64,000 nt of DNA, from assembly GCF_009834535.1 (NCBI RefSeq), contig NC_045713.1, positions 17,980,001 to 18,044,000 of the forward strand. Reading direction: 5' to 3'. Of this stretch, positions 27,201-64,000 are shown in pieces. This DNA is from Camelus ferus. Its lineage: Eukaryota. How positions within the stretch are numbered: the first letter of the stretch is position 1; the number at the start of each line of letters is the position of its first letter. Made by a program: the position numbers and the translations under genes. The notes below the pieces were generated by a model. It ran no database searches, had not been told where the DNA came from, and worked only from the letters and a program-made list of their open reading frames with translations.

Positions 27201-29386
27201 CTGCTCCCCTGCAGTGTCCTTGCTAGATGGGAACTGAGACATTATTTCATCTGCAGAGAGGAGAGAAGTGCACTGGACATGGGGCCACACTCTAGCCTCC
27301 CTCCCAGTTAAGGCTTGTGTCCCTTTAGCTGCTACTCTGGGAAATCAATCTATACCTTTAGTCTCCACCCTGCTCTGCCCCCATCCTGTCAAGGCCTTTC
27401 CCAGTAACCCTGGTACCTGTGATGTTGAACTGAGTAGCATTAAGTTCCTGAAGTAACCGGTCTAGCTCACAGAGCCCCGTGCCCAAGACACCACAGGAAG
27501 AGGAGAATGGAGGGGCCGCAGGGGCTGCAGGCTTCGGGGACCGAGGCTTGCATACCGTGCTGGGAAACAAGGTAGGAACCTGGGTTCAGGGTGGGGAATT
27601 CAAGCCTCCTCATGTGAGTCTCAGATGGCTCCCCCACCCCCCAGTCCCCAGCACCCTCACCTGTATAGATGGTCCTTGTCCCCAGAGGCTCCTGAAGACT
27701 CCCCAGACCCCATCTATAGAGAAGGACACATGTATGGGATGATAGGCCTATACTTTGCCCCACTCAGGCCCAGATTCTCCTCCCCGGGGCAAACCTGGCC
27801 CTAGTAGTTGCCCCAGTCCCCGGCATCTGATCTCACCTGTGGCAGAGGAGACGTCAGGGGTTCTGGGGGCCGCTCTTTTAGAGCCCCTGACCTTGGCATG
27901 TGTGAGGTGGTTGTCTCCAGGTCAGAGAGTAGGGCATCTGCAGGAAGAGGCCATCAGGGTGAGAGGTTGAGAGGTGAAGGTTAGGCCAGAGACGGGGCCT
28001 TAAGAGATCAGAGAATAAGTGTTCTAAGTGGGCAGTATTTCAGGAGGACAGAAGCCAGCATTAAGAGCAGAGGTCAAGAATCAGAAGGAAACACAATGCC
28101 AGAGATGTGGAAGAGCAGCAAGTAATATGTATGATCACAATATCCCACATGGCTCATCCTGGGAGTCACTTATAGACTTAGCTACCTGATTCTTTTATTC
28201 TCTCAATCTTTTCTAATGCAATCCAAATTGGCTCTTTGCTGGAGCCAAATTTGGCTTCATCCCAAATTGCTCAATTGGCTGCATGCCAGGCACCAGCTTT
28301 CTGATTGGATGTTCTTTCTGCCACACCCCCTACACCTAAACAGGCCCCTCCCTCCAGGCGCCACTGGGCTCCACTCTATGCACCTCATTGGTGAGTCGGC
28401 TGGGACCTGCTTTCTGATTGGCTAATTCTTCACAGTACTAGTGCCCGTTACCCCTGCTGAGCAGCACCCCCTACTGCAGGGTGCTGGAACCCCTTCTCTC
28501 CCACGGAGGGTACAGCCTTCCAGCCTCAGTTCCAACAGACAGGGAGGATGAGATGCCTGGACCCTCNNNNNNNNNNNNNNNNNNNNNNNNNNNNNNNNNN
28601 NNNNNNNNNNNNNNNNNNNNNNNNNNNNNNNNNNNNNNNNNNNNNNNNNNNNNNNNNNNNNNNNNNNNNNNNNNNNNNNNNNNNNNNNNNNNNNNNNNNN
28701 NNNNNNNNNNNNNNNNNNNNNNNNNNNNNNNNNNNNNNNNNNNNNNNNNNNNNNNNNNNNNNNNNATGCCCTCAGATCTGGATCCTTTGAACTCTTTACC
28801 TTTCAGAACCTAGAAGTCTTTGCCCCTTTACTCTTCATTTCTGAGCACCTTAGTGGAACCCTTAGCCACCTTTTGGCTTCTTGGCACTCATCTATTATAC
28901 TTTCTGCCCCAAGGAACTGACCTCTACCATACTTAAGGGCCCTTAACTCTTTCCTTCCCAAAGCCCTAGGGAAAGCCCATTTTCTTCTCCAGAACTTGAT
29001 GTCATATTCTCCCTTCCCGTCTACTTTCCCAGTCCCCGGACTCAAGGTCCCGTTAACCCCTCCCTTCCCCGAGCTCCTGAGCCCAGGTGCCCACAGGCGC
29101 TGCACCTCCCTGCCCATCCGTCAGTCCTCAGCCAGTGATGGAGGAGCGGCGCGAGAGAAGGAGGGAGCGGCCAGTCTGGGAAAGGCAGGAAGGGAGAGGC
29201 AGGAAGGGGGACGTGGAGTCGGAAAGGAGGCGCCGGCAGAGACCAGAAGCCAGAAGCCAGAAGACAGGAGGCAGGGATGGAGAGATGCCGGGAGTGCGAG
29301 GGGGTGCAGGATGGGGAAGTGGGTCCAGGTGGTGGTGAAGGACTAGGGACAAGGGGACCAGGGCCCCACTCACCCAGGTCCTCCAT
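24284..29386 (-). CDS. TGFB1I1: TGF-beta-1-induced transcript 1 (Hic-5), paxillin-family LD/LIM protein, 456 aa
   Basis: 11 exons: 29374-29386, 27837-27937, 27661-27713, 27417-27559, 27163-27250, 26942-27047, 26631-26825, 25593-25766, 25237-25318, 24780-24928, 24284-24550. Total 1371 nt, open. LD motifs ([21 protein letters not shown]) and four LIM domains ending PCFLKLFG. Confidence 0.97.
25935..26165. mobile_element. hAT DNA transposon fossil (MER96-like)
   Basis: CAGTGCCTAGGGCCCATGG...TCAGGGCCCACGAAAGTCATAATGCCACCCTG. Confidence 0.45.
26330..26545. mobile_element. MIR SINE fragments
   Basis: GCTTCAGTTTCCTCATCTGTAGAATAAGAGTAATACCCAC. Confidence 0.55.
28227..28421 (-). promoter_or_regulatory. 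Cluster of five CCAAT boxes in TGFB1I1 intron 1
   Basis: ATTGG on + at 28227, 28274, 28304, 28387 and 28417; two read CCAATCAG on the - strand. Confidence 0.45.
28567..28765. other. Assembly gap (199 N) in TGFB1I1 intron 1
   Basis: Run of N. Confidence 1.
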
Positions 29387-38298: not shown

Positions 38299-39038
38299 CT
38301 TGGCTCAGGCCTAAGGCTCCGCCCCCCTCCTCGCAGCTTATCCAAGGGAGCGGAACTGGAAGAGAGGGGCGTGGCCAGGCACCTCCTCTCTGACGCTTTT
38401 TAAATAGCGCCGCCGCAGTTATTATGCAAGTCGGAAGTTGTAGTTCGCGATCCCAGTTCTCTGACTTGCACAGTCGCAGAAGACACGTAGAGAGTAGTGG
38501 TTAATCGTTGTACGAGACAAAGAGGCGCGTGCGGTGCACGCTGGGCTGTGTAGTCCGCGCCAAGCTTAACACACCTAACTTAGGATGGATGGGAAACTCT
38601 CCCAGGGTATTCGGATGGGTCAGTGCCTCGGGGGAACCCAGACATCTGACCAGAGTCTCAGTACCGTCCCGTTCCAGGTGACTTGGCTAGTCCGCCCCCA
38701 GCGTGTCCTCGGCAGCGATAACCTTTTCCTGCAGGCTCTCTCTGACGCCTCCCAGCGGTGGCCGGGGCACCGAAGTCTGCGCTGACCAACTGAGAACCCC
38801 GAGCCAAGCGGAAAAAATCAAGTTCCTAACAGCGGCTGCAAGTGGGAGCACTTGTTCCGCCAGGTGAATGAGAGGGTTAAACCTACCGAGACCGTTCGCT
38901 GCTATTTCCTAGAATGGCACGGGCTAGTGGACATTTCCGTTTCCGTTGCTGGATCCCTGGGTCCCAAGTGTCTCCAGCTCTGGTTGTGCTTATGAGCTAA
39001 GTAGCTGGTATCTAGAAAACGGGACTCTCTTCACCGCA
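38299..39038. promoter_or_regulatory. CpG-island bidirectional promoter shared by ARMC5 and the zinc-finger locus
   Basis: Divergent ATGs about 740 nt apart. GGAAGTTGTAGT at 38433-38444 (ETS plus ACTACA/ZNF143-type motif); YY1-type CGCCATCTT over the ARMC5 ATG; GC boxes. Confidence 0.7.
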
Positions 39039-40425
39039 ATGGAGTCAGCGGCGCCAGAAGCTGCAAGGGAGAAGTTGGACGGGGCAGAGCAGGGGGAGAA
39101 CCGGACGTCAGGATCCCAGGGAGTCCCGGGGTCCCCCTTCAGTTGCGGAGTTGTTACACCCAATCGGCCCTTCTTGATATGGCCCGGGCAGCCGGCCGCT
39201 CGGGAAATGATGCTGGGCCTGCAGTACCTACGTAGGTCAGTCTCTGGCCCTAGGGAGGAAGAAGATCCTGCCAGGACCAACTATCCTGCTGTCCCCAAAG
39301 CCTTCGAGTGCCGGGAATGTGGACTGACTGCAGCCTATCTCCCTGACGTCGTTCACCACCAAAGCAGCCACGGAGGTGACAAGCCCTACTGCTGTCCAGA
39401 GTGTGGCAAAAGCTTCCGACGTGGCTCAGATCTGGTTAAGCACCACCGGGTACATACTGGCGAGAAACCGTACCCCTGTCCCGAGTGTGGCCGTTGCTTC
39501 AGCCTGAACTCCAACCTCATCCAGCACCGTCGCTCCCACTCAGGCCTCCGGCCCCACAAGTGTCTAGAGTGCGGGGAGGCATTTGGCCGCAGCTCGGACC
39601 TGGTTAAACACCAACGGGTGCACACGGGTGAGAAACCTTATGCCTGTGCGGAGTGTGGTAAGACTTTCAGCGTTAGCTCCAACCTGATCCAGCACCAGCG
39701 GACGCACATAGGCGAGAAGCCCTACCGCTGCGGAGAATGCGGCAAGAGCTTCTGCCTCAGCTCTAACCTGGCGCAGCACCAGCGCTCACACACGGGTGAG
39801 AAGCCCTATCGCTGTGTCTGGTGTGGTGACAGCTTAGCTCTTACCTGCTCAAGCACCAGCGTTCGCACACAGGGGAGAAGCCCTACAGTTGCTGTGAGTG
39901 CGGCAAGAACTTCACCAACAGCTCGGACTGCCTACGGCACCAGCGCACCCACAATGGCGAGCGCCCATTCAGGTGTCCTGAGTGTGACCGTGGCTTTAGT
40001 GAGCGCACCCAGTTCGCTGAGCACCAGCGTATCCACTTGGGTGAACGGCCCTATGCCTGCCCAGAATGTGGCAAAACCTTCAACCACAGCTCCAAGCTCC
40101 TGAAACCCCACGAGCGCACACTGGCGAGAAGCCCTATCAGTGTCCCAACTGCAGCAAGAGTTTTGTACACAGTTCAAATCTGCTGCGGCACCAGCACACT
40201 CACGCTGGCCAGAAGCCTTATGCTTGTAGCGAGTGTGGCAGGAGCTTCCGCCAGAGCTCCCACCTGCTCATCCACCAGGTGGCGCACAGCGGTGAGAAGC
40301 CCTATGTCGGCCTGCTGTGTGGCAAGGCCTTTGCCCGCAGCTCCAACCTGGGCCAGCACCAGCGGACACACCAGGGTGGCAGCCCATATCCCTGGCTTAA
40401 GTTTCAGCCCCAACTTCAGCCCTGA
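39039..40425 (+). pseudogene. Single-exon C2H2 zinc-finger gene, 13 tandem fingers, two frameshifts (in the ARMC5-COX6A2 interval that holds ZNF843 in human; orthology not established)
   Basis: Kozak GCAATGG at 39039. Six fingers with TGEKP linkers in frame, then a shift at about 39835/39836 in finger 7 and a second at about 40106-40110 in finger 10. Finger 13 has Cys>Gly (40309-40311); stop at 40423-40425. Confidence 0.85.
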
Positions 40426-41539
40426 CTTGGGTCCAGACCTCAAGAGGCCTGAGCAGACTAGCACTTCTCAGCAAACCTTGTTTCTGCTCCTCTAGGGTTG
40501 CTGGTTTGTGGGCTGAATCAGGGAACCCCAGGCTGGAGGAATCAGAACAGAAAAGTGGACTTAGGCCTGGCCTGTGAGGCCCTGGAGACAGAAGGCCAGC
40601 TGGAGGGAGATTTTTTGGTTGGCAAGTGCTATCCATCACTGGCGCAGCTGCTTCAAGATGCAGATACACCTTTGGCAGCTGCTGGCCAGATCCCTTCAAA
40701 GGCCTAGGGAGGGATGATGCTAATCACACCCAGAGCAACAACTACCTTGTCCCAGAGGAACAGGGCTGGACACCAGGCAAGCCCCCATGAAGAACGCAGT
40801 GGAGAAGGGAGCGGGGTCAGGGGGCCCTAACCTCCAGAGCAGACCCTAAGGAAGGCTGTGTTGTGGCAGAAGGACCAGGCAATTTGAATTTGGGACTATT
40901 ATGTGAGCTCTGGGGTGTATGACCCCTTTGAGAGAACTCTTGTAAAGAACAGGGTGAAACTGGTGGGGCCCTGGGCCAAAGCAAAGGACGAGGAGACCTG
41001 TCTGTTGATTTCAGGGGATGCTTTGTGCCATTTCTAGGCAGGGGCAAAAGGCCCGAGGTTGGTCATCTACCCCTTCCTCTTCTTTAGCCTATTACCTCGC
41101 AGGTTCCCCGGGCTCTATCTCTGATCCCTCAACAGGAAAAATGGTGAAGATTCACTTGTGCCCAGACACTGGGGATTGGACATGGCCCTTTTGCCTGGGC
41201 CCTGCAGAGGGCTGTCTAAGTAAACAAATGTGTTTCTGTTGGTAAAACTTAAGCGTATATGGAAGCCAGAGGGAGGCTTCCTTAAGCAATGCACAGTGTG
41301 TGCCCGGAGCCGAGTCTAAGCTGTGAGGCCCTTCTCTTTCCTCCTGGTAGCTTGCTTTGTTCCTGGGAGGGGCACAGACTGTAGCCTTTTTGAGGTTGGG
41401 GGAGGCCTACTGCCCACCCAGTGGAACCATAAGCCCCATGCATCTGGTGCCCTGTCCCACAGTCTTGCCTTTTATCAGGCTTGGTGCATCTAGAACTGTA
41501 CCCACATAGAATAGGGGCTGAAGGGAAGTAACCCCTCTC

Positions 41540-46549: not shown

Positions 46550-47599
46550 GCAGCAGAGGATGCTAGCAGCCCTCAGGCCACTGACCAAGTACCAGCCAGA
46601 AAAACTCTTAGTGGGAACTTCCAAGCTGAGACCTGGGGAAGAGAGTTCTCAGGGAATTGTTTGGCAATGACCGTCAAAGCTCTGAGCGGAGAGAGGGGCG
46701 CTTAGAACCTTTTCATGTAAAAATACCCTTCTTCATTTCTGTTTTCTCCAAGAGTCATATCGTAAGTTGGGAGGGAGCTGGAGGGGGCTGTGTGTGGACA
46801 GAGAAGGTCAAGTAACTTTAACTGGAATAAGGCCCCATCTTCTCAGCAGCAGTTCCAAAGTCCAGCTAGGAAAAAGCAACTATAGGAGAAATTCCATCAT
46901 AGATCAGTGAGGGTGCAGGAATAATTTAGCAGCACTACATAACATTTGATTGTTCAACAAGTTTCCTAAAAAAAAATGACCCCAAAAAGGTTAAAAAAAA
47001 AAAAAAAAAGCCCTCCCCCACAAAAGAACCAGTTTAGAATTACCAGGAAGAACAGGTCTGGAGTCCCTTCTTGAAAATATACCTTCCTCATTTTTCTTTC
47101 ATATATTTAGATTAGATACATAAAACTTATTTTTCTTTTATATATTTAATTCAGATTAGGTGTATCAGCTCTTGATCAAAACTGGAGGCATCCTGTTGGA
47201 CAGTAGTTCTGAAAAGGCATTTCCATAGAGTTATCCAAAGTAACATGGTTCAAACATTCATTAAATACATATTTTTAGAGCACCCACTTCATGCCAAGTT
47301 CAGTGCCGGTGCTGAGGAAAGAACCACGAACACCGCAGATGTCAGCCCTGCCCTGTCTTGCAGATTTCTAAAACCCTGATTTCTAGAGCCTCTAAGGTTC
47401 ATACGGGCCTGCCTGTGTGTTCTTCCTCTTCCTCCAAGTAGTCAGGTTTTTTCCAGACTGAAAAAACATACTTAGCAGTAGACACCTGTCAAATTTGTGG
47501 CTGTCCAGCACCTTGGAAATACTCATCCTATACTGGGGGATTTTCTCCAAGATACAATTCCCACCTCCTGAAGGCAGAACTCAATTTCTCAATCTTTAA

Positions 47600-50052: not shown

Positions 50053-53000
50053 AGTGTGGAAGCTGTGTGTCCGCAGGCTCCGTGGGGCTCGCGCCGGGAG
50101 ACCGCGGGGCGGGGCGGGGCGTCGATGGCTCTCTCCGGGCGCATGCGCACGGCGCAGTGGGCGCTCCACCTGCTCTTCCTGAGACCCTGACTTGCGAGGG
50201 ACTTGAGGGAACATTCTTGATGAACAGGTATGAGATGGTCGCTCCTCTCTCACCTATTAATAATTAGGGCTCTCGGCTGTAAAGAGCTTTCAGATACACA
50301 GCATTCTCACAGTAACTGTGGGAGCAAAATGTAATTGTGGTTGCCCCTTCTCCAGGGGAGGAATTTGAGATTCTCAGAGATTAAATGACTTAAGCTCAGG
50401 CAGCTCATCAGAGGCCCCGTGGGGACTCAGGGCTGCAGACCCTGAAGTACCACTTTTCGCCTGACACACATAGAGGGCATCTGTGAATTCCAGCTATCTG
50501 GAAACAACCCTGATTTCAAACATAGATTCTACAGCCAGCCCTATATGTGAGGCTTCGTGACCCAATTCTGGATGTGGAATATTTCGATCATTCTCTGTGA
50601 CCACCTTTAATGGGTCTTCTGTATTAGTTGGGGGAACAGATGCTTCCTTTCTGGAAGTCTGGTTCTCCTAGTTTCTGGGGACACCATTCAAGGGGGATGT
50701 TGGTTCAAGCAAACTCTGGACATTTCATTCACCTTCTAGGACAGTCAGCTCACTTGCCATTACCCAGGAGCCTGAAGCCTGAGCTGAAACCCATGACCAA
50801 CACAGACAGAGAGAGCTTCTTTTGGCCTCCTCTCCTGACATTACTCACAGCACCATTAGGAAAAAATACTCACACTCCCCAGTCACGTGAGAAAGAAAGA
50901 GAACATTTTCTTTACCCACGAGCAGGTCCACCTGCCCCTAACTCTTACTAGACCAGCATTCAGGTCTCTGGATTAGAGCTCTTTCATACAAGGAACCTGT
51001 TACAAACATCCTCATTTAATGCCACAATTCTTACACAAATGAGAATTCATGCTGACATCATGCCTGCTTCTATAATGTGGGTCATCCTTGAAGAACTCTG
51101 GCAGGTATATAAAAATATGAAAATCTTTCAACACCTTGGGAAGATGACTTAGTACCTGGTAAGTTGTTCAGGCCAGTCCAGATCTGTGCAGAAATTATTG
51201 CCATGGAAATAGATTTGTAGGTTAAGACAAGATCAACCAATAGGGGTAGAGATAAATGGGAAAAGTAGATTATTAGGACAAAGGCTAATTGGGAGCCTCA
51301 CAGGTGAAATCCTCCCCACTCAATGTGGCAGTGTCTTCAGACTTGTCACCCATCATTTCTTTGTACTCACGTATGAAGAAGCCACACTATTAGGAGAAAT
51401 AAATCAGAAAATCTGGATAGGCGGGCAGGGCAGGAAGTTGAGAGTAGGGAAAAGCTGAGACAGAAGAAAGGAACTAAGCTGACTTGTATTTGTGGGCCAG
51501 AACGCGTATGTGAACAACAGCTCTCGTGTGCTGAGCACCTACTGTGTGCCAAGTTCAGTAGTTATACACATAATCCAAAGCAGAAAAGCGCAGATTCTGC
51601 ATCCTTTGGCCTCTTTCTGTCTCATTCCAGCCACTCTGTGATGTAGGCATTATTAGCATTTCAAAAATGAGGAAACAGGCTCAGAGAAGTAGAGCAAGCT
51701 GCCTGACATTAAACAGTGAGTAGGAGTCAAAATGTGTACCCAGACCTGCCTGACTTCGTTGTCTGAGTTCTTCCTGCTGTACCATCCTGTCTGTGGGACG
51801 GCTGGGGTCGGATGCTGTTGGTGTCAAGGGGGCGATGAAAACACTCACCCTGTACAGGACGGCTGTGATGAGAGCCAGCAGCAGCAGTCCCCCCATAGAG
51901 CTGCTCACAATGAGGGGGACAGGATCATAGAGCTCATACTCTTCTAGCACTGTCACCATCTGATCGGGGGATCAGAAAGTATCAGGCTTCTTGCCGTTCC
52001 AGGCTCTTCCCAGGTCCCCAACCTTTACCTCCCTCCCCTCCTTCACCAGGCTCAGCTCCAACGGATGAGATACAGAAGCACTCATAGGCTTAGGGACAAC
52101 TGTCCTACCCAGGGACCTCCATCCTTCCTCCCTCCAGGCTTGCAGGCCCCCCACCCAGCACCACAGATTTAGCATCAGAAGCCCTCTTGCCAGCCTGGCC
52201 ACTGCCCACCATACAGTCACTACCTGGGATCTCAAAAAGGCCTCCTGTCCTGAAATCTGGGAATACGTGGATCTGTTGAATGTGATTTCAGCCACACTCA
52301 CGACCAGTATTTCCTTCTGCAACATCTGTTAAAAAGGAGAGAGCTGGGAACTAGCTCTGGGGAAGGCTCAGGGTTAGAAAATGCCCTGCCTTCGGGTGGG
52401 CACAGACATATTAGCCCCCACTGGAGTCGGGGAAGGGACTGAACTGTTGGGCCTCCACACCTGGCTGACCCAGCCAAAGCTGAGTTTGCCCTTCAGGATG
52501 AAGTCAAGTTCCTCCTGGACTCCGAAGGAGGGGATGTCACAGTGGAACCTCAGGCAGTCGGCAATGGAGCAGTCCTAGGGTCAGGAGAGGAATGAAGCTG
52601 AGCAGGGTCTTCACTTAAGGAGAGACCACGGGAGAAAATAAAGTGGGTCAGATATGGGGTGGGGAACAGATGAACAATTACAGGTTGTAAACATAGTGCT
52701 GCAACCTAGCAGTACATTCCCCTGTGTCTCCCAATGTATAGCTGGTCCTGCAGTGGGAGTCCATGGCCTTGCTCACCAGCATGAGGCTCCCTGGAGTCTG
52801 GAAGTCAGGATGCTGGGGAGGTTCCCTCTCTGACACACAGGGGAGACTCTAGGGAGGGAGAGCAATAGCCACAGAATGATCAACAGTTCACTGGCAAGAG
52901 GGTACGAGGCACTGTGAGATCAGACCCTGGAGAGTGAGGAAAGACAGACGGGCACCTGCAAAGGGGCCACCACAGCCATGTCCCACACAGCCACACTGTT

Positions 53001-53911
53001 CAGCAGGACAGGGACCCAGAAATGAATGCTGAGGGCGAGATCTGGCTGACCCAGGTTATTCACCTGCAGAAAATGGAGACAACATTACTGTTGTCCTTGA
53101 AGCATCCCAAATCCCACCCCTTTTCCGGCTCTCGCCCTCCGCTCCTCTCCATCTTCCCCCACTGGCTTCCTCCATTAGCAGTCCCTTGGGAGGGACAGAC
53201 GTGAGTATTCTCTGGCCTCTCACACGATATTGATGCTCAGCTTCTTTTCTGCTCTTCTCATCAGAAGCTGAAAAATTGAAGTATTTGGTGGAGTCTTCCT
53301 GGCTGTAGAGACAGGGAGGGCTTGTTGGTGAAAAACAGCCCTGGGACCATCCTCAGTTGCACCCCAGCCTCCTGCTAGCTCTGCTGGGCCCAGCAGATGA
53401 CCGGGGGGAACGATGACTGTCCCCACATACCTGTACAGCCTCCCCTCCATGGCCTTTGCCCTGGTCACCCAGAACTGCTAGCTTGTCCTTTGATACCCCT
53501 GCTCTTTCCTATCCCCATGACTTTGCTCAAGCTTTTTTTTTTTTTTTCCTGCTTAGAATGTCCTTGTCTGCTCCTCCCTCTAGAAAGTTTCACTTAAAGG
53601 CCCAACTTGAACATCACCTCTCATAATATCAAAACATTTCCCAATGGATAAAGGTGTTCCCATTGCTTTCTCTAGTAGGTACAATGTTGGTTTCCTGTAA
53701 TGCTTGCAGAGGCAGCTGCCAGAACAAATTAGCCTGAGGGGACCTCAGGGAACCATGGCCTGGATCACTTGGTAAAAGATGGGGTGCTAGTCCTTCCATG
53801 ATGGGGAGAAACTGATGTGGCTATCCTGGGGCAGTTAAGTAAATGTAAAAGAGGAAAGATGGTGCATGGAGTCCATGGGTGAGCATAAAATCTCCAGACT
53901 GCTGGTGGCTT

Positions 53912-53936
53912 TCCATCCATCCATCCATCCATCCAT
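53912..53936. repeat. (TCCA)n microsatellite, about 6 units
   Basis: Direct reading. Confidence 0.8.
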
Positions 53937-56079
53937 GGATTCCTTCAGTAAACATTTACCATGTGCCAGGCTGTGTGCTTGTTTCTGGAGAGTCAACAGT
54001 TAACAAGCCATGATCCCTGCCATCCCAGAGCTTAACATCTAAGAGCTCAGTGGAATCAGGCAAACAAGGAGAGTGACTAGCAAGCAGAAGCCAGGCCAGC
54101 CCTAAAGGAACTCCATGGGCCCCCTTGGTTTTCCCACAGATGTGACTGTCAGCTTGATGATTAAGAACATAGACCCTGGAGCCAGACCACCTGGGTTCAC
54201 ATCTCAGGTCCACCACTTCCTACCCAAGTAACCTAAGGCAAATTCCTTAACCTTTCTGGACCCCTGTAGTTTTTTCCTCTTTAAAAGGGGGATGCTAATA
54301 ATAGTGCCTGTAACAGACTGGTGATGAGGCTTGTAGTGGTGCCATAAATATTAAAATCTACTTTTTCCCCCTTAGGATGTTAGCCTTCCTTTCTGCTTCC
54401 CATCCCGCCCCCTTCTCTCTCTCTGCTTCAGTTTTCTCACCTAAAACTCTTCTAGTTCTAAACCTCTTTTCAAATTTGAGTAGACCACTCAGCTTCTCCA
54501 GTCCTTGGAGAGGCATGTACAATATGGCCCTTGGGCACAGCTCTGGACCCAGACCATCTGGGTTTGATTCCTGGTTCTGCTGCTTACCAGCTGAATGACA
54601 GGGCTAAGTTATTTAACCTGTGGATTTCTTTGCTGGCAAAAAGGGGTGTAATAATAACTATATCACAGAGTTAACAGAAGGGTTAAATGAATGTAAATGC
54701 ATATAAAGTACTTAAAACAATGCCTGGCATATCGTTAAGTATATGTAACTGTGAGCTCTTATGATAAGTTTCAGCGTTTCCCATGGATAGAAGGGGAAAT
54801 TCACACACACAGTTTGGAAGGGCAATGACACCACTTGACCCCCCACGTAGTTCCCCTAAAAATTGGCACATCAGCGGCAACAGCAGCAAACTCCGTCCCA
54901 CAACTATATGAGAAGCTTCTGACCAATTCTAAAAGCTCTGGACTTTAGCCAGGTATGTGGGGCCCCTTGTCCTGCTCCCAGCCTGGCCCGCCCCCACTCC
55001 CTCACCCACCTTCAGAACCCAGAGCAGCAGCCCTACACTTGCCTTTCCTGCCTTGACCTTGGTTTCTTAAAGGCCCTCCCAACAATTTCTCACATCTCTG
55101 CTCTCCTCTGAGTTTTATGAAAACCTGATCTTTTCTTTGCTCTGTGTGGTGACAGACCATATCCTGTTGGGCACAGACTCCCCACCTCTGAGTACTCAGA
55201 AAATCTTCAGTCTTCATTGAGTAGCTTCGATTCAGCACATCTGTGTTTAGCCCAAAGGATAGAATTGGCTTCATGCTAAAGGAAGCCTGCATCTTGGAGA
55301 GAGAGGAGGGAATGTGCATGGTGGCAAGGCGTATGTGTCCCATCACCAGGCCAGTTCATTAGAGAAGAAGCAAGAATGATGGAATATGCTATTATGGTAT
55401 AAATATATGGCTGTCACAAGAAGTCCCATGTGAGGAGTCAGGGCAGCTAGCTTAGATACCCATCTTCAAAAGAGCAGGCTGGCCTGCAAGGGGAGGTACT
55501 AGGATTGGAGGAAGGTCCGGGGGAGGGCCAGGGATTAAGTACCTGCTGATCACCGTGTAGACAGCGTATTTCACTGGGAGCTCCAGCTGGAAGTTAGACT
55601 TGCTGGATGCAGGCTTATTATTTTCACTTGGGGGGGGGGGTTCCTGGTTGGGAAGGAATCCAGGAGAGGAGTCTCCAGCTAGGGCATGAGATGGGAGGGT
55701 GGGGGATGCACCATACCTGGCCTGGGTTCACCTGCTTGCATTGGCTGTCAAAAGCAACTTGTCTCCCAGGGTGGCCTTGTAGGAGACATCAAATGTGACC
55801 ATGAAGGTGCCCTGAGGGAAGAAGAAAGGGTTGGGGATAGGGAAGGCCATGGGGGAGTGAGGGAAGGAAATGGGTCACGACATGGGAGAAGAGTCATGAG
55901 AAGTTGGGGGGAAGCTCTGACTTTAGTGCCCTCTTGGAAGATGGGATGGTTAATGCTACAGCCGCTGCTACTCAAGCCCTCGTCCCCAGTGGGCACTGCC
56001 TCACATGCCAGGTGCAGGGGCCGCTGATGGGGTTGCTTCCAGAGGAGGAGGATTTAAAAAAACTTACCCACATGCATAT

Positions 56080-57380
56080 ATGGGTTTGATATATAAAAGT
56101 GGTGGCATTGCAGAGCAGTGAGTGAAATGACAGATTTTTCAGTAAATAGTCCTGGGAAAATTGGCCCATACAAAACAAACAAACAAACAAACAAACAAAC
56201 AAACAAACAAACAAACAAACAAACATTGGATCCTCACCTCACTCCATACATTAGAATAAATCTCCACTGGATTAAAGACTTAAATGTGAAGAGGCAAAAC
56301 TATCAATCTTTTAGAAGAGATAATATAGCAGAATATCTTTATAACCTTGGACTAGAGAAGTATTTCTTAAACAAGATAAACACACAAAACACTAAATACA
56401 AAGGGAAAGTTAGATAAAAAGCAACCACAATCAAATTAAGACAGTCTGTTTATTAAAAGACACTACAAAGAGACTAAAAAGACAAGCGACCAAGCAGCAG
56501 GATTGGAAAAGATATTGGAACATATATAATTGGAAAAGAACTAGTAACCAGAATATGTAAAGAGCTCTTACAACTGAATAAGAAAAAGATGGACAACTCA
56601 ATAGAAAAAGAAGAAAAAGACTTGGTGCTCAAGAATGGTCATGGCCAAAATCAGAAACAACTCAAATGACCACTGATTGTCAAATGAGTAAATAAATTGT
56701 GGTATCATCATACAAAGGGATTCTATATAGCAGTGAAATATTCCATAGCTATAGACCACAACATTGATGGATTTCACTAGCATAATATTGAAGAAAAGAA
56801 GAAAGACACAAAATAACATATAACATTGTTATCACTTATATTTGGAATCTAAAAAATAAACAAATGAGTTTTACAAAATAGAAGCAAACTCACAGATGTA
56901 GAGAACAGGCTGGTGGTCACTACTGAGGAGAGGAATGGGAAGGGCAAGATGGGGGTAAGGGGTTAAGAGGTACAAACTACTATGTATAAAATAAGTAAGA
57001 TATAAGGATATATTGTCCAGCACAGGAAATATAGCCAGTATTTTATAATAATTTTAAATGGAGTATAATTTATAAAAATATTGAATCATTAATGTTGTAC
57101 ATCTGATATACTTTAATTTTTTAATTTCAGGGAAAAAAGGAACTTACAACATGTTTCCATTCATATAAAGTTCAAATAGTGGCAAAACCCAACAGTATTG
57201 TCTAGGAAAGTATTTATGGGTGGTAAAATTATAAAGAAATACAAAGATTTGATTATCACAAAGTTAGAATAGTGATGAAATTTGGGGAGAGTGTGAGGTT
57301 ATGATGAGGAAGGCACATAGTGAAAGGGCTTCTGGAGGTGTTAGCAGTGCTTTAGTTTTTAAAATGTTTTGTGAGGGAGG
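56080..57380 (+). mobile_element. Old L1 (ORF2 end/3'UTR) with a younger L1 3' end nested at about 56810-57125
   Basis: GGATCCTCACCTCACTCCATACA...ATTAAAGACTTAAATGT; nested CACTTATATTTGGAATCTAAAAAA...AGCACAGGAAATATAGCCAGTATTTTATAATAA. Confidence 0.75.
56173..56224 (+). repeat. (AAAC)13 perfect microsatellite
   Basis: Direct reading, 52 nt. Confidence 0.95.
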
Positions 57381-57388
57381 TATTTATC

Positions 57389-57494
57389 TTTATTTATTTT
57401 TACTTATTTATTTTTTTAATGGAGGTACTGGGGATTGAACCCAGGGCCTCATGCATGCTGAGCACACACTCTATCGCTGAGCTATACCCTCTGC
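57389..57494 (-). mobile_element. tRNA-derived SINE (camelid-type)
   Basis: AATGGAGGTACTGGGGATTGAACCCAGGGCCTCATGCATGCTGAGCACACACTCTATCGCTGAGCTATACCC. Confidence 0.8.
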
Positions 57495-59559
57495 CCAGTG
57501 CTTTATTTCTTGACCTGGATGTTAATTGCATAGACTTTGCTTAATATTATTCGTAAAGCTATACACATGCCTTATGCACTTCTGTGCATGTGTTTATATT
57601 TCATCATAGAAGAATTAAAAGGAATCTACTATAACCCAGGACAGGGGAGAGGTCCCAGCCACTAGAGCCCAAGGGAGCTGTTTACCTGGATTCCTAACAC
57701 TTGTCGGTAGGACAGCCCTGCTGGATAGTGGAAGCTGATCACAGTTCCGTAGGAATCCTTGCCCTCATTCCACACGTTCACTGTCACATTGAGGTCCAGG
57801 GAGCTCCCCACCACCAGGGTCTGCAGGCTGAAGGAGGAAGGACAAGGCCAGGAGAGAGACTCCATTGGAAGTAGGTTGGAACTGAGTCACGGGCAGGGGC
57901 AGGGCTGTGGGAACTCATGAGCTATGGGCTGATAACCTTCCAATCAAAAACATTTCTTTGTTGGAAGGTGAGCCAAAGGGAAACATAAGGACTTCTCATC
58001 CTAGGAGGATGGGAGACCCAAATGCTTGGCTGTCTGGCTATGAAAGGAGATAGAGCTCACCCTGAGAAGCTGAGGCTGATGCAAGGGCCCCTTCACAGAG
58101 GTAATCTTGCCCACAGTTCTCCCCAAAGGGGAGCTGCAGCAAAACAGTATATTCTCATCCCATCCGTCTTAATCCATCTCCATCCCCTCACTGTGGGCAC
58201 TCATCCCATTGAGTATTACTGAGCACCACCTGCACCCAGCACCAGGCTAGATACTGGCGAGGAGTGGGGCAATGGGAGAGGGGCAGCTAGACTATGAAAA
58301 AGAGATAGGACAAGATCCTTGGTTTCAAGGAACATAAAGTTTAGTTGAGGAGTCAAATCCAACTCACATTGAACCAACTAGTCAACAAACATTATGAAGT
58401 ATCAGTAACGAAACAGGTTCTGGGTTGGGTGGAGGGTGAGGAAAGGTGGGAACCAAAGGTGAATTAGACACAGTTCTTGAACTCAAGGAACCTGCAGTTT
58501 CAAGAGAGCCACAGGAGTAGAAGTAGAGTGCCACGGTCCAGTCATGTGATATTTGGCATGAAATCACCATGACGCAGTAAGAAGCCAGGGAAGAAGTGAC
58601 AGTTGCTGAGTGTGGTCTTCAAAAGAGAGGGAGGTAAAGACTGGGGCTCCTGGGGATGGGAGGAGATCTTTGAAGTGGAGAGAAGAAAATGTTTTCCAAG
58701 TAAGAGGTATGACATGGACAAAGGCAGAGGTAGAAATGAGAAAAGTTGGGAAGAATCTGCAGAATGAGATCCAGAGAGTTTATGCTGGAGTAAAGTGGAT
58801 ACTCAGCTGGGATGTGTGAAGGGGTCCAAGCTAAGCAGGACTGTGGTAACTGGGGGGACGTATTTTAGATTTGATGTGGTTGTTGGGCCACTGGGAGCCA
58901 CTGTAGGTTCTTAAGCACAGGGAGCCACTGTGAAAGTCAACACATCCCTGGGACTTCACTGGAAGACTTACAGAAGCAGTGAAGAGGTCCTGTGAGCCCA
59001 TGGCCAGTACAGGGCGAAGGTTCTGAGATGAGGGGATGGGCTCCCCAACCAGGGAGAAGTTGAGCCACAGGATGATGGGGTTCACCACGTCCTCCACACA
59101 GCCCTGGGGGAGAAAGGGCTTTCAAGACCCACAATCTTCCTCCTTACTTGCTACCACTATGGCTTCTTTTCCACTGCATCCACTCCCCACTGTCCAGTGC
59201 CCCATTCAAGCTGTGGAGCCAGGTTCCCTGGTCCCAAGTTTCCCCTCCAGCCTGAGCCTCTCCACCATTCCCACTTCACTCAGCAGGGAGGCTAGCCTTG
59301 GGCTCCTTCCCCTCGTCTCCCTTTCCAGGAACCCAAAGTCCTCACTGGTAAAAACAGCTTCAGGGTTTCACAGTGATCCCCCAGCCCCAGGATTTTTCTT
59401 CGAGTCAAAGTCCAGTTCTTGGTCTCATCAAAAATGGCACGAGGAATCAGACGGCCTGGATCCAATGCCAGATCGTACTTGACAGAGCTTTGGACGTCAC
59501 CTGAAGCACAAGGGGGAATGGAAGCCGGAAAGTTAATAAGAGAAACTCGGACTTCTGTT

Positions 59560-60220
59560 TCCATTTATTCATGCAATGAAGATTTGTTGAGTGCTCTCTT
59601 TGGGCCGGGAACTGGACCAGTTGCCAGGGATGCATGTGGAAAAGACAGAGAAACATGGTCCCTGCCCCGGTGAAGCTCACGGTCTAGAAACGGAGAGGGA
59701 CATGTGGGACATAACATCCCAGTGTGATCCGTGCCAGGGCGGGATTCTCTGTGGTACTGGGGGGCCTTGCTAACTCAGACTGCGGGTCAGAGACGCCTTC
59801 CTGGAAGGGCCTGTCTCAGCTCTGACCTGGAGGATGAGCAGGAGTCGGGTGAAGAGTGGGGAGGAGAGAATTCCAGACTGTGGGAACAGCAGCTAAGACC
59901 AGAAGGGAGAGAGAGGCTGGCACATGAATTCAAAAGTGTCTGGAGTAAGGAGGAGTGGGATGAGGTGAGGCTGGAGGGGCAGAGAGGGGCTAAATCAGCA
60001 GGGGCACTGCAGGGGAGAACTGTGGTCTTTATCAATGCAAGAGGGGGCACGTGAGGGATGTTTAGGACCAGTCTGTGGGGGGTTGGGGGGTGGAGGCTAC
60101 GTGGACACAGCTTCAAGTGTAGGTAGGAAGGAGAAGGCATCCTCAAGGAAGGCAATAGCTGGGGCTGGTGGAGAAAAGTGGGCAGACTTCACTTGTATCC
60201 TGGAGACAGAACCTGGAGGC
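59560..60220 (-). mobile_element. L2 LINE fragment in an ITGAD intron
   Basis: CATTTATTCATGCAATGAAGATTTGTTGAGTGCTCTC...CATGGTCCCTGCCCC. Confidence 0.55.
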
Positions 60221-62820
60221 TGAGGTGTGGGCAGAGGCAGAGAGAAGGGCAGCTGGTTGGATGGGAGGTCAGATTTGGATCTCTGGGCCCATTCTGTCCT
60301 GACCTCTAGCGGGCGGGGGTGGGGGCGGTGTCTGGGTCTACTGGGAGGAAACTCACCGAGCTGATCCTGTGAGCTTTCGTGGATAGTGAGACAGACTCTG
60401 GTGTCCCCAATTTCCAGGGTGGCGGGCACATCTTCCCAGCACCAGTACACAGCTTTTGCCACTTCCGGGGGTGTGAATATCATAGCTACCTCCACATTCA
60501 GCACCGGCAGGCTCCTGAGGGTACACACAGGGGCTGAGGACAGGCCTCTGGCCTCTGGGAGGAGAATGGGGGAGGGGACAGCTTGGTGAATTAGACACAG
60601 GTAGACAAGGGAGAAGTTGTCACCTGAACAGCAGCACGTGTCCCCGGGCCCCCACGGCCAGGTCCACCAGTCCATCCTGAGTGATGTCCTGACACCCACT
60701 CAGTGACTGCCAGAAATACTGAAGCCTGGGGGAGAGCTGGGAGCCTGCGATCCACCTGCCAGAGAGAAAGGAGGAGGGGAAGTCAAAGAAAGGGGATTGG
60801 AGGTTTGAGAAGACCTTAGTTGGGAAGGACACTGAATAGAGAAGTTGAAAAGGAGAGAGAAGTGGAGAGCAGGGTCCCAAGACAGAGAGAGGAGCACTTG
60901 TGGTCCAACAAGGACCATGAGGGTGCAGGCTAATGACAACATCAGTGCACAACAATAGGCTCATCACAGATTCATTTACTCCTCCTTTGTTCCTTCATAA
61001 CTATGTGAGGAATGCAGTGCTTAGCGCTCTCACTGAGTTATCTTTACAAGAAGCCAGTGGAATTCGTTCATCCTTTAATGTTTCATAGAAGGAAACTAAG
61101 GCTCACAGAGGCTAAATCAGTCACTTGCCTAAGCCCACGCAGCTAACAGGGCTGGCTAGGCATTTGACTTGGGGCCCTGATCTCTTGACTGCTAAGCTGC
61201 TCAAAGGGGAAGGTCACCAATGAAGCCGGTGACTGGAGGCAGCATCAGGCGAATCTAAGACGTGGGAAAGAAGGTGGAACAGAAGAAAGAGGTAGAAGAC
61301 GGGGGGCCTCACCTGGCTGTGCGGAGGGGCTGATGCTCAGTCCTGAGGTTCCATGAAACAGGTAGATGGCACCCCGGTTCTCCTGCTCTCCTGGGGCCCC
61401 GATGGCCACGTCCATCAGCTTGCCCCCATTCACATCCCCCATCACTGTCAGGGCTGCCCCAAAGTGGCTCCAGGGGTGGCCTTGCTCCCCATGGAGAATG
61501 ACCCCACACTGCCACTTAGCCCACTGCAGAAGAAAACCAGTGTCAGGTACCAACCCGGGCAAGCCCTCCACCCACACCCTGACTCCGCCCAACCCAGGTC
61601 CCGTCAGCCACTCACCCCCTTGGGCAAGGGGCACACGGACACCCGGCCCCCCCGGGTCTGCTCATAGTAATGCGGGGCCCCGATGAGGACCAGGTCGGAG
61701 CTGCCATCTCTGTCCACGTCCACGGAGCAGAGGGAGGCCCCGAAGTAGGAGCCGATCTGCAGGGCAGAGCCCGGAGTCATCCTGCCTGCCCTTGCCAGAG
61801 GACCCCTTCTGGGCCAGGTCCCGCTCTCCCCAGCCACCAGCACCTCCCTCCCCGCCCCACACCCACTTCATCTCCCTCCTCTCTGCCCCTGGAGACCCTC
61901 CTCCACGCCCAACCTGGGTCCCTGTGACTTCAGCCTTCGGCCTCCACTGCCTGGACACCTGGGTGAAGAGGACAACCTTCCCGGTGTGCTGATGGCGGGG
62001 GGCCCCCAGGACCAGGTTCTGTACCCCCTTCCAAAGGGCCAGCTCAGTGGAGTAACCTGAGGGGGCCAGGCCTCAGCACAAAGGCTTCCCCTCCCGCCCC
62101 CAGGGCCCGCCCTCCCCGGCAGCCCTGCCTGACCCTCCAGCCGCAGCCCTGTCTCACCCAGGTAAGAGTCCCTCATGTCCCCGTTCTCCTGGGACATGTT
62201 GATGAAGGTGGGGCTCATTTTGGGGGGGTACAGGAAGGCCCCTCCAGACCAGCTGAAGCTCCCCACAGCCCCCAGAACTGGTCCATCCTGGGAGGAGAGA
62301 TTCCAGGGCTGAGCAGGTGGGAAGGAGAAGCATTGCCTGCCGCTGGCTCCACTCGCCATTTGGAGTTCCTCTTCCCAGACTCTCACCGCAGCTTCCGTGT
62401 CCCTGACTCCCGTATCTCTCAGTCCCTCCCCACTGCCACTGTCACAGTCAGCCCCAGCCCTCACCCGCTGCCCTTCTGCCTCCTCACTTGCTCTCCTCTG
62501 CTTCATCTACTGCCCCAGAGCTAGATTTCTTCAAACCCAAATGTGCAGCCACCACCCTGCTAGCAAACCAAGATGGCTCCCTGTCACCAAGCCCCTGAAG
62601 GTGGCATCTAGGATCCTTCCCAATCAAACCAAATCCTCTGCTCCAAAACACACCAAGCCTCTGGCCTGGACACTTCTCTCTCCTCTCTTTCTGGGACTCA
62701 ACTCCTCCTTCTGGAAGAGTTAACCTCAAAGTCACCTCTGTGAGGTCTTCCTGGGCTCCCTCCAGAAGCGACAAGTGTTTCCCCTTCTGAATACTTTGTT
62801 TATTGCCTTTTCAAACTTTT

Positions 62821-62961
62821 AGGATATGTTTTTTTTAATTTGCATTTGTTTTGGGGGGTAATTATGTTTATTTATTTATTCTTAATGGAGGTACTGGGGA
62901 TTGAACCCAGGATATTGTACATGCTAGGCAGGCACTCTACCACTGCACTATACTCTTCCCC
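62821..62961 (-). mobile_element. tRNA-derived SINE (camelid-type) inserted in an L2
   Basis: GGAGGTACTGGGGATTGAACCCAGG...; TSD TCAAACTTTT at 62811-62820 and 62962-62971. Confidence 0.85.
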
Positions 62962-63169
62962 TCAAACTTTTGATTATGGATAATTTAGAACATATACAAA
63001 AGTGGAAAGAAATGTATACTGAATCCAAAAGTATCGGCGACCTAGCGTCAGGGATTAATTCATGAATAAGCTTGTTCTGTTTCTGCATGCCCCTCAATCA
63101 CCCTCAAAATTATTTGGAAGCAAATCCTTCTGGATATTTTGAACACACATGTCCTTTCTGGCAAGTCAG

Positions 63170-63700
63170 GCCGTGTTGTGGTTTCCTTGGTCTGCATGGT
63201 CAGGTCTTTCCCATCTCTCTGGCTCTCTTTCCATGCTGCCCCTAGCCCACTCTGCTCCAGCTGTGCTGGCCCTTCTGTCTCTCTAGTGCAGTAACCTTAT
63301 TCCTGCCTCAGGACCTTTGCACTTGCTTTTTCCTCAGCCTGGAGCAATCTCTCCCCAGATTTTCCCAGGCCTAGCCCTTTCTCATCATTCAGCCTCAGCT
63401 GTCACTCCTTAGGCTTCCTCTGATCACCTCTCTTTCTCTACCCCAATGCTTAGCACAATCTGAGAGTCTTTGTTTGTTGTTTGCTATCTCTTCCCACCAG
63501 TAATGCATTCCAGGAGAGCAGGAACCTTGGCCATCCTGTTCTTGGCTGTGCTTCCAGCACCTGCATACACTGCCCGTGTGTCTCTCCTGGACTAGATGGT
63601 GAGCTTGAGGACAGGGTCTGCTTTCTTATTTATTCTCGGTCCCAGGTCCCAGCCCAGGGTTGGCACAGCGTTGGTGCCTGAGACTCGTTTATCAAGCATA
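63170..63700 (+). mobile_element. L2 LINE fragment
   Basis: GGACCTTTGCACTTGCTTTTTCCTCAGCCTGGA...CCCAGGGTTGGCACAG. Confidence 0.6.
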
Positions 63701-64000
63701 TTATGGCTCCACCCACCGTGGTGAGGACTGAACTGAAGCCTTCTTGTGACATCTCATGCTGGAAGGAGCTACTTGTCCTCGACTGGGTTCCAGCAGGGAA
63801 ACAGGTCACTCAGGCTCCTGGAGATCTTGAGACCATGAGGACTCAGAGCAAAGAGAGGAGAGGTGGTCTGGAGCTTAGGTTCTGGGGAACAGTGTTGGAT
63901 GAGCTCTGAGTAGGGATGGATCCTCAGGCCTATGGGGGACAACCAAGTCAGGACCCTTTCTATTCCAAGACCTAACCTCACTGCCCACTTACCCTCAACT

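What the first reader, a model, noticed from the sequence alone, without database searches (positions are those of the whole stretch)
51285..62287. ITGAD (CD11d) appears to be a lineage-specific pseudogene
At least three frame-breaking lesions in different exons (net +1, never restored), a mutated acceptor, substitutions in conserved FG-GAP positions (YFGQ>YFWQ, SGGQ>SGCQ) and an altered GFFKR. The neighbouring genes are clean, which argues against general assembly noise. Loss of one of the four beta-2 integrin alpha chains would matter for macrophage biology in this, probably camelid, lineage. I cannot exclude an intact duplicate outside the window.
Basis: partly seen in the sequence, partly recalled or inferred. 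Interest (0 to 1): 0.75.

Follow-up and report, generated by a model that had tools for sequence, protein, structure and literature searches.

The report
Dead CD11d integrin gene in camels
Camels carry only a broken, still-transcribed remnant of ITGAD (CD11d), one of the four leukocyte beta-2 integrin alpha chains, so they are natural knock-outs for this macrophage and T-cell adhesion receptor.

Summary
The window is from a Camelus genome: 99.94% identical to C. ferus and 99.19% to dromedary. It holds exons 10-30 of ITGAD on the minus strand, at the ancestral position beside COX6A2, a C2H2 zinc-finger gene and ARMC5.

Compared with the exactly resolved 30-exon ITGAD genes of hippo and goat, the window shows:
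- a lost acceptor at exon 10 (AG to TG);
- a +1 insertion in exon 14;
- the exon 15 acceptor moved 1 nt upstream (+1);
- a -1 deletion in exon 19;
- a TAG four codons before the normal stop.

Residues invariant in 32 mammals are replaced: FG-GAP Gly to Trp, Gly to Cys, and a Ca-loop Asp to Gly. GFFKR reads GFFIR.

All lesions are identical in three independent assemblies. A spliced contig from a public sequencing run, 100% identical to the window, carries both +1 lesions and stops in exon 15. The dromedary also lacks exon 2 and has -1 frameshifts in exons 5 and 9.

Since the two camel lineages split, the exons have evolved neutrally (13 nonsynonymous to 3 synonymous changes; exon divergence about equal to intron divergence).

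This is a unitary pseudogene, inactivated roughly 10-20 Myr ago. Whether llamas and alpacas share it is untested. I found no published report. It is a solid but ordinary kind of finding.

The parts
63717..63790 (-). ITGAD exon 10 (..[24 protein letters not shown]). Its acceptor dinucleotide at 63792-63791 is TG instead of AG.
   Evidence: Hippo and goat have cacag|GAAC; both camels have gctg|GAAC. The next AG, 8 nt downstream, would shift the frame into a stop.
62158..62287 (-). Exon 11, intact, 130 nt as in hippo and goat
61914..62056 (-). Exon 12, intact, 143 nt
61616..61756 (-). Exon 13, intact, 141 nt (FG-GAP repeat 5)
61313..61523 (-). Exon 14 (FG-GAP repeat 6), 211 nt instead of 210: +1 insertion (G at about 61322). 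The Ca-loop Asp is replaced by Gly (DVNGGKL, codon 61424-61422). GRFG/SRFG reads SHFG (codon 61466-61464).
   Evidence: The insertion is present in spliced contig L008.
60624..60755 (-). Exon 15 (FG-GAP repeat 7), 132 nt instead of 131: the acceptor AG is displaced 1 nt upstream (60757-60756), leaving an extra nt at 60755. Gly to Trp (60712-60710) and Gly to Cys (60694-60692) at positions invariant in 32 mammals. The premature stop of the real mRNA falls in this exon.
60357..60514 (-). Exon 16, length as in goat (158 nt)
59346..59500 (-). Exon 17, 155 nt, intact
58972..59103 (-). Exon 18, 132 nt, intact
58061..58133 (-). Exon 19, 73 nt instead of 74: 1-nt deletion between 58084 and 58083 (..CEGDLS.. 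region). The exon is skipped in contig L008.
57686..57827 (-). Exon 20, 142 nt, intact
55922..56035 (-). Exon 21, 114 nt, intact. The acceptor ggaag|CAA is the same as in hippo. The exon is skipped in L008, as in an annotated right-whale isoform.
55732..55811 (-). Exon 22, 80 nt, intact. L008 runs on into the following intron (to 55635).
55543..55626 (-). Exon 23, 84 nt, intact
53224..53302 (-). Exon 24, 79 nt, intact
52956..53063 (-). Exon 25, 108 nt, intact
52777..52848 (-). Exon 26, 72 nt instead of 78 (in-frame loss of 2 codons)
52461..52574 (-). Exon 27, 114 nt, intact
52224..52325 (-). Exon 28, 102 nt, intact
51849..51959 (-). Exon 29 (transmembrane helix), 111 nt, intact
51273..51386 (-). 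Exon 30 (cytoplasmic tail). GFFKR reads GFFIR (Ile codon 51374-51372). TAG at 51287-51285 replaces the CAG four codons before the ancestral stop (51275-51273).

Best explanation
The region is the 3' two-thirds (exons 10-30) of ITGAD, the gene for integrin alpha-D (CD11d), in a camel of the genus Camelus. The gene is a unitary pseudogene. It sits at its ancestral locus with all its introns, but it can no longer encode an alpha chain.

Shown:
- Five disabling changes lie in the window: loss of the exon 10 acceptor, +1 in exon 14, a 1-nt acceptor shift at exon 15, -1 in exon 19, and an early TAG in exon 30.
- Residues that are invariant in other mammals are replaced.
- All of these are shared by Bactrian-type camels and the dromedary.
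- The locus still yields spliced RNA. That RNA keeps both +1 changes and reaches a stop codon inside exon 15. Any product would therefore end within the beta-propeller and lack the thigh and calf domains, the membrane anchor and the tail.
- In the dromedary, the 5' part outside the window has lost exon 2 and carries -1 frameshifts in exons 5 and 9.

Inferred:
- The transcript is probably degraded by nonsense-mediated decay.
- No CD11d/CD18 heterodimer reaches the cell surface in camels.
- The other beta-2 alpha chains (CD11a, b, c) cover its roles.
- Inactivation happened roughly 10-20 Myr ago.
For: Identity and orthology:
- The top protein matches are integrin alpha-D of whales, hippo and ruminants at 71-77% identity.
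- 12.9 of 13.0 kb aligns collinearly with hippo ITGAD at 81%.
- The neighbours are COX6A, C2H2-ZNF, ARMC5 and SSF (SLC5A2-like).

Lesions:
- Exon lengths and splice sites were compared with exactly resolved hippo and goat genes and with further orthologous contigs.

Not an assembly artefact:
- The C. ferus draft differs from the window at 4 bases and one 4-nt repeat over 14.2 kb, none of them at a lesion.
- The dromedary has 16 exon substitutions and no exon indel relative to the window.

RNA:
- Logan contig L008 is 936 nt and 100% identical to the window.
- It joins exons 14-15-16-17-18-20-22, using the donor CCAG|gt and the displaced acceptor.
- Its exon-14 frame stops in exon 15.

Relaxed constraint:
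- Bactrian versus dromedary shows 13 nonsynonymous to 3 synonymous changes, omega 1.3.
- This fits omega = 1 (p 0.47) and rejects omega = 0.31 (p 0.012).
- Exon divergence is 0.65% against 0.49% for introns (Fisher p 0.35).
- Omega on the camel branch is 0.49-0.51, against 0.39 for hippo and 0.28 for goat.
- There are 12 camel-only changes at 234 sites invariant in 32 mammals; other species show 0-10.

5' half:
- Exon 2 lies in a roughly 300-bp deletion. Exon 5 has -1 and exon 9 has -1 in the dromedary. The exon 9 lesion is also in C. ferus.

Annotation:
- The only camelid proteins found are a chimeric C. ferus ITGAD-ARMC5 model and a 974-aa dromedary model. Both skip or pad the damaged exons.
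Against: - ITGAD evolves fast even where it is intact (omega 0.28-0.39). The rise on the whole camel branch is therefore modest.
- The count of camel-only changes (12) is only a little above hare (10) and tarsier (9).
- GFFKR to GFFIR is weak evidence by itself: seal has GFFQR and pangolin GFFKH.
- Exon 21 skipping in the RNA contig is a normal isoform elsewhere.
- The RNA evidence is one contig from one run. I infer its nature (RNA-seq, same species) from its spliced structure and its 100% identity, not from metadata.
- The exon 2 and exon 5 lesions rest on the dromedary assembly alone.
- I could not search a whole camel genome for a second, intact copy.
Confidence: 0.93

Rival explanations
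1. The frameshifts are sequencing or assembly errors in this assembly, and the gene is intact in the animal.
For: Each indel is a single base, and two lie next to short runs of the same base. A second gene in the window, the C2H2 ZNF, also looks disrupted.
Against: The same bases are found in three assemblies made from different animals and with different methods. Two of the lesions are also in a spliced contig from another run. The window and C. ferus differ by only two indels in about 35 kb, neither in an ITGAD exon. Indel errors cannot explain the Gly to Trp, Gly to Cys and Asp to Gly changes, the lost AG, or the neutral N:S ratio.
Confidence: 0.01
2. A working alpha-D chain is still made, either through cryptic splice sites that restore the frame or from an intact duplicate outside the window.
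For: A second AG 10 nt into exon 15 (..gtggatcgcag|GC) would join exon 14 to exon 15 in frame at the cost of three residues (my reading). ITGAD-like duplicates exist in cats and lemurs. I could not search whole camel genomes.
Against: The one transcript seen uses the first AG and is out of frame. I found no splice choice that repairs the -1 in exon 19, and skipping that exon (73 nt) also shifts the frame. The exon 10 acceptor is gone. Upstream, exons 2, 5 and 9 are damaged in the dromedary. No camelid ITGAD-like protein other than the two lesion-dodging models appears among the top 120 of 756 homologues; a near-identical copy would rank there.
Confidence: 0.03
3. The remnant has been kept as a transcribed non-coding RNA with some regulatory role, rather than being mere debris.
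For: Spliced RNA is still produced long after inactivation. Exon 1, with its ATG, and most splice sites are preserved.
Against: Exons diverge at least as fast as introns between the two camel lineages, so nothing indicates constraint on the sequence. Residual transcription is common for unitary pseudogenes (general knowledge). One contig says nothing about abundance.
Confidence: 0.04

Closest known systems
ITGAD (integrin alpha-D, CD11d) of other mammals, e.g. hippo P0210 and goat P0222
   Same: Same locus, the same exon plan for exons 10-30 (exon lengths identical or differing by whole codons apart from the lesions), and the same domain order: FG-GAP propeller, thigh and calf Ig-like domains, transmembrane helix, GFFKR tail.
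   Different: The camel copy has lost its reading frame and a splice acceptor, carries replacements at invariant residues, and evolves neutrally.
Lineage-specific unitary pseudogenes of immune genes
   Same: Ancestral position, introns retained, several independent disabling mutations, intact orthologues in sister lineages, residual transcription.
   Different: This particular gene and lineage were not found in the literature library I could search.
Itgad knock-out mouse (from my own knowledge, not checked here: viable, with mild T-cell, macrophage and infection phenotypes)
   Same: Absence of CD11d/CD18 with the other three beta-2 integrins present.
   Different: The camel loss is natural, fixed in at least three camel genomes, and millions of years old, so compensation may have evolved.

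Membership tests
ITGAD orthologue (rather than ITGAX, ITGAM or ITGAL) | Best sequence matches are integrin alpha-D | tested here: met
   nearly all the top hits are named integrin alpha-D (whales, hippo, ruminants, horse, carnivores) at 64-77% identity; the exon 14 ORF matches solved human alpha-M and alpha-X chains at E about 1e-31, which places it in the CD11 family.
ITGAD orthologue (rather than ITGAX, ITGAM or ITGAL) | Collinear with ITGAD of other species through introns, at the conserved chromosomal position | tested here: met
   12.9 of 13.0 kb aligns in order with hippo ITGAD at 81%; the paralogue-like contig L005 aligns in exons only. COX6A, ZNF, ARMC5 and SSF domains lie downstream in the order expected for human 16p11.2 (the order is from my own knowledge).
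Unitary pseudogene | Mutations that destroy the reading frame or splicing | tested here: met
   exon 10 acceptor lost; exon 14 +1; exon 15 +1; exon 19 -1; early TAG; exon 2 deleted and exons 5 and 9 each -1 in the dromedary.
Unitary pseudogene | Ancestral locus with introns retained (not a processed or duplicated copy) | tested here: met
Unitary pseudogene | No functional copy elsewhere in the genome | tested here: inconclusive
   One search shows no other camelid ITGAD-like protein among the top 120 of 756 homologues. I could not confirm that the camel RefSeq protein sets are in that collection, and I could not search a whole assembly.
Unitary pseudogene | Orthologue intact in related lineages | tested here: met
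   the hippo and goat genes give 30 exons with GT/GC-AG borders that translate exactly to 1162 and 1166 aa.
Unitary pseudogene | Neutral evolution after inactivation | tested here: met
   13 N to 3 S between the camel lineages (omega 1.3; omega 0.31 rejected at p 0.012); exon divergence about equal to intron divergence.
Processed (retrotransposed) pseudogene | Lacks introns and lies away from the parent locus | tested here: not met
   Twenty introns are present in the window, with positions matching hippo and goat.
Functional beta-2 integrin alpha chain | Open reading frame through the propeller, thigh, calf, transmembrane helix and GFFKR tail | tested here: not met
   the spliced sequence stops in exon 15; the RNA contig does the same.

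The most novel reading that the evidence does not exclude
CD11d was lost near the base of the camel lineage, possibly before the split from llamas and alpacas. The loss may be linked to camelid-specific biology of the cells where CD11d is normally prominent: splenic red-pulp macrophages, which clear red cells, and subsets of cytotoxic and gamma-delta T cells. On this reading camelids would be a natural, long-compensated knock-out that shows what alpha-D/beta-2 is really needed for.
Probability: 0.1. Interest if true: 0.6.

Novelty: new member of a known kind. Interest (0 to 1): 0.4.

Why it matters
CD11d/CD18 is the least understood of the four leukocyte beta-2 integrins. From my own knowledge, it is studied as a target in spinal-cord injury, atherosclerosis and sepsis models.

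A large mammal that has lived without it for millions of years shows that it is dispensable in at least one immune system. It also offers a natural comparison for the roles of red-pulp macrophages and T cells.

There are practical consequences:
- Anti-CD11d reagents should not be expected to stain camel cells.
- The public camel 'integrin alpha-D' protein entries (EQB77936.1 and the 974-aa dromedary model) are annotation artefacts and should not be used as orthologues.

Tried and rejected
1. My single search of protein representatives used the FG-GAP exon 14 ORF. It was swamped by bacterial multi-repeat proteins and gave only one useful hit, P0063.

2. I first took the exon 21 acceptor (ctctgg|AAG) for a mutated site, and exon 21 skipping in the RNA for its consequence. 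I rejected both: hippo has the same ggaag|CAA acceptor and a 114-nt exon, and a right-whale isoform skips the same exon.

3. I considered a cryptic acceptor 10 nt into exon 15 that would restore the frame after exon 14. The RNA contig uses the first AG instead.

4. I weighed GFFKR to GFFIR as a disabling change and downgraded it, because seal and pangolin also vary in this motif.

5. I searched for New World camelid sequence. No hit above 81% identity turned up in either ORF search, apart from the camel RNA contig itself. The one metagenome scan found only distant FG-GAP proteins.

6. The donkey ITGAD locus was wanted as an outgroup but is not on record. Branch rates therefore rest on a three-taxon comparison.

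7. My first exon coordinates were off by 1-3 nt at four borders and were corrected.

8. I did not read the stretch of the C. ferus locus that corresponds to the window's N run (28567-28765).
Full report
WHAT IS THERE

The minus strand of 51273-63790 carries a run of short open stretches whose translations are those of a CD11-type integrin alpha chain. The exon 14 ORF matches solved human alpha-M and alpha-X chains at E about 1e-31.

I placed 21 exons by locating each peptide and reading its borders. I then checked the plan against two intact genes. For hippo (P0210, locus L016) and goat (P0222, locus L017) I resolved all 30 coding exons with GT/GC-AG borders, so that the spliced CDS translates exactly to the annotated 1162- and 1166-aa proteins. 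The window holds exons 10-30. Exons 1-9 lie beyond position 64000.

WHICH GENE AND WHICH ANIMAL

A 70-aa ORF hit (P0199) shares its 90% cluster with EQB77936.1, 'integrin, alpha D precursor-like protein [Camelus ferus]'. The evidence for the animal:
- The C. ferus locus (L014, GCA_000311805.2) is 99.94% identical to window 64000-49802. The differences are four substitutions and one 4-nt repeat-length change.
- The dromedary locus (L015, GCA_000803125.3) is 99.19% identical over 17.7 kb.

The window is therefore from a Bactrian-type camel, in an assembly other than that C. ferus draft.

The evidence for the gene:
- A search with the ITGAD part of the C. ferus model returned integrin alpha-D of whales, hippo, ruminants, horse, carnivores, bats and primates at 64-77% identity.
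- The locus aligns in order with hippo ITGAD over 12.9 of 13.0 kb at 81%, introns included.
- Pfam hits on downstream ORFs give COX6A (49.6-50.0 kb, + strand), a C2H2 zinc-finger gene (38.9-40.5 kb), ARMC5 (31.5-36.2 kb, - strand) and a sodium:solute symporter (about 15 kb).

This is ITGAD at its ancestral place.

THE LESIONS INSIDE THE WINDOW (unless stated)

1. Exon 10 acceptor. Hippo and goat have cacag|GAAC. Both camels have gctg|GAAC, so the AG is lost at 63792-63791. The next AG, 8 nt downstream, would shift the frame into a stop.
2. Exon 14 is 211 nt instead of 210. An extra G at about 61322 turns ..ISPSHSQ into ..ISPSAQP. About 45 mammalian ORFs covering this exon all read ..SHSQ (or ..SPSQ) followed by the donor.
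3. Exon 15 is 132 nt instead of 131. Orthologues read ggccag|CGGATC and camels read ggcag|GTGGATC. The stretch has the same length, but the AG lies one base upstream, which adds one base to the exon.
4. Exon 19 is 73 nt instead of 74. One base is missing between 58084 and 58083, compared with three orthologous contigs, one paralogue, hippo and goat.
5. TAG replaces CAG four codons before the ancestral stop (51287-51285).

All other exons have the length seen in hippo or goat, or differ by whole codons (exon 26 lacks two codons), and all keep GT-AG borders. Read in the ancestral frames the 822 codons have no other stop. Read as it stands, the spliced sequence stops inside exon 15 after ..[25 protein letters not shown].

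MISSENSE DAMAGE

I aligned the camel sequence with 32 other mammals. Camels show 12 unique changes at the 234 positions where all the others agree. These include:
- the FG-GAP repeat 7 glycine (YFGQ to YFWQ);
- the glycine of SGGQD (to Cys);
- the fifth residue of the DVNGDxLxD calcium loop (Asp to Gly).

The alignments at these sites are and the codon coordinates. Other species score 0-10, so this count alone is only a mild excess. GFFKR reads GFFIR, but seal (GFFQR) and pangolin (GFFKH) also vary there, so I give that little weight.

After the two camel lineages split, each took further hits at conserved sites: Arg to His (SHFG) in the Bactrian type, and Gly to Arg in AIGAPG in the dromedary.

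NOT AN ASSEMBLY ARTEFACT

- None of the window-versus-C. ferus differences touches a lesion.
- The dromedary differs from the window at 16 exon bases and by no exon indel, so every lesion is shared.
- A Logan contig from run SRR33129661 (L008, 936 nt) gives independent support. It is 100% identical to the window but spliced. It joins exon 14 to exon 15 through the donor CCAG|gt and the displaced acceptor. It continues through exons 16, 17 and 18, skips exon 19, includes exon 20, skips exon 21, includes exon 22 and runs into the next intron.
- L008 therefore carries both +1 lesions and has no long open frame.
- I infer that L008 is RNA from the same species. The basis is its structure and identity, because I had no run metadata.
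- Exon 21 skipping is also an annotated right-whale isoform, so it is not evidence of damage.

OUTSIDE THE WINDOW

In the dromedary:
- exon 1 with its ATG is present;
- exon 2 lies in a roughly 300-bp deletion (the flanking hippo blocks abut within 5 nt);
- exon 5 has a 1-nt deletion;
- exon 9 has a 1-nt deletion.

The exon 9 deletion is also in C. ferus. The exon 2 and exon 5 lesions rest on one assembly.

SELECTION AND TIMING

- Nei-Gojobori counts on exons 10-30 give 13 nonsynonymous and 3 synonymous differences between Bactrian type and dromedary (omega 1.3).
- This fits omega = 1 (p 0.47) and rejects the hippo-goat value of 0.31 (p 0.012).
- Exon divergence (0.65%) is not below intron divergence (0.49%; Fisher p 0.35).
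- A three-taxon decomposition gives omega 0.49-0.51 for the camel branch, against 0.39 for hippo and 0.28 for goat.

If the background omega is 0.28-0.39, about 16-29% of that branch was neutral. I took about 65-70 Myr for the branch and about 4.4 Myr for the Camelus split. Both dates are from my own knowledge and were not checked here. On those dates, the omega estimate and a rough indel-clock estimate (9 intron indels per 49 substitutions; four small frameshifting indels in 3.5 kb) both point to roughly 10-20 Myr. That range brackets the split from llamas and alpacas, so I cannot say whether they share the loss.

HOW IT WORKS

- Shown: the locus is transcribed and spliced, but the message cannot encode more than a fragment of the beta-propeller.
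- Inferred: the transcripts are substrates for nonsense-mediated decay. No alpha-D/beta-2 heterodimer is made. Its adhesion functions are absent or taken over by the other three beta-2 integrins.

COMPARISON WITH WHAT IS KNOWN

This is a textbook unitary pseudogene. Searches of the paper library for ITGAD or CD11d together with pseudogene, gene loss, camel, dromedary, alpaca or llama found nothing relevant.

The only camelid 'proteins' in the collection are two gene models that avoid the lesions by padding with intron text or by skipping exons. One of them is fused to ARMC5. Among the top 120 homologues I saw no other camelid entry, which would fit annotation as a pseudogene, but I could not confirm that camel RefSeq protein sets are in the collection.

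VERDICT

This is a new member of a well-known kind and of moderate interest.

Noticed in passing
window 38946-40495 (+): A C2H2 zinc-finger gene is split over two overlapping ORFs in different frames (385 aa and 152 aa, both with zf-C2H2 hits).
   Followed up: partly
P0203 (EQB77936.1, C. ferus) and P0206 (dromedary, 974 aa): The public camel 'integrin alpha-D' protein entries are annotation artefacts. The C. ferus model fuses the 3' half of ITGAD to ARMC5 and inserts intron-derived residues. The dromedary model drops the damaged exons.
   Followed up: yes
window 56173-56176: A 4-nt (GTTT) repeat-length difference from C. ferus inside an intronic microsatellite. It is one of only two indel differences between the two assemblies over about 35 kb (the other is 1 nt at 46993).
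   Followed up: no
window 57371-57544 and 62840-62983 (+): Two intronic copies of what looks like the same tRNA-derived SINE; both translate to MEVLGIEPR... in the ORF list.
   Followed up: no
window 55627-55641: The exon 23 acceptor differs between the camel lineages: ...cccaag| in the window and ...acccag| in the dromedary, after a poly-C tract. The RNA contig L008 ends in this tract without splicing intron 22.
   Followed up: partly
window 28567-28765: A run of 199 N between TGFB1I1-like and ARMC5 sequence.
   Followed up: no
L005/L006 (ENA metagenome contigs): Ruminant-like host contigs that align to the camel gene in exons only. They are probably the neighbouring paralogue (ITGAX-like). 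This shows that host DNA in gut metagenomes can serve as a comparator.
   Followed up: partly
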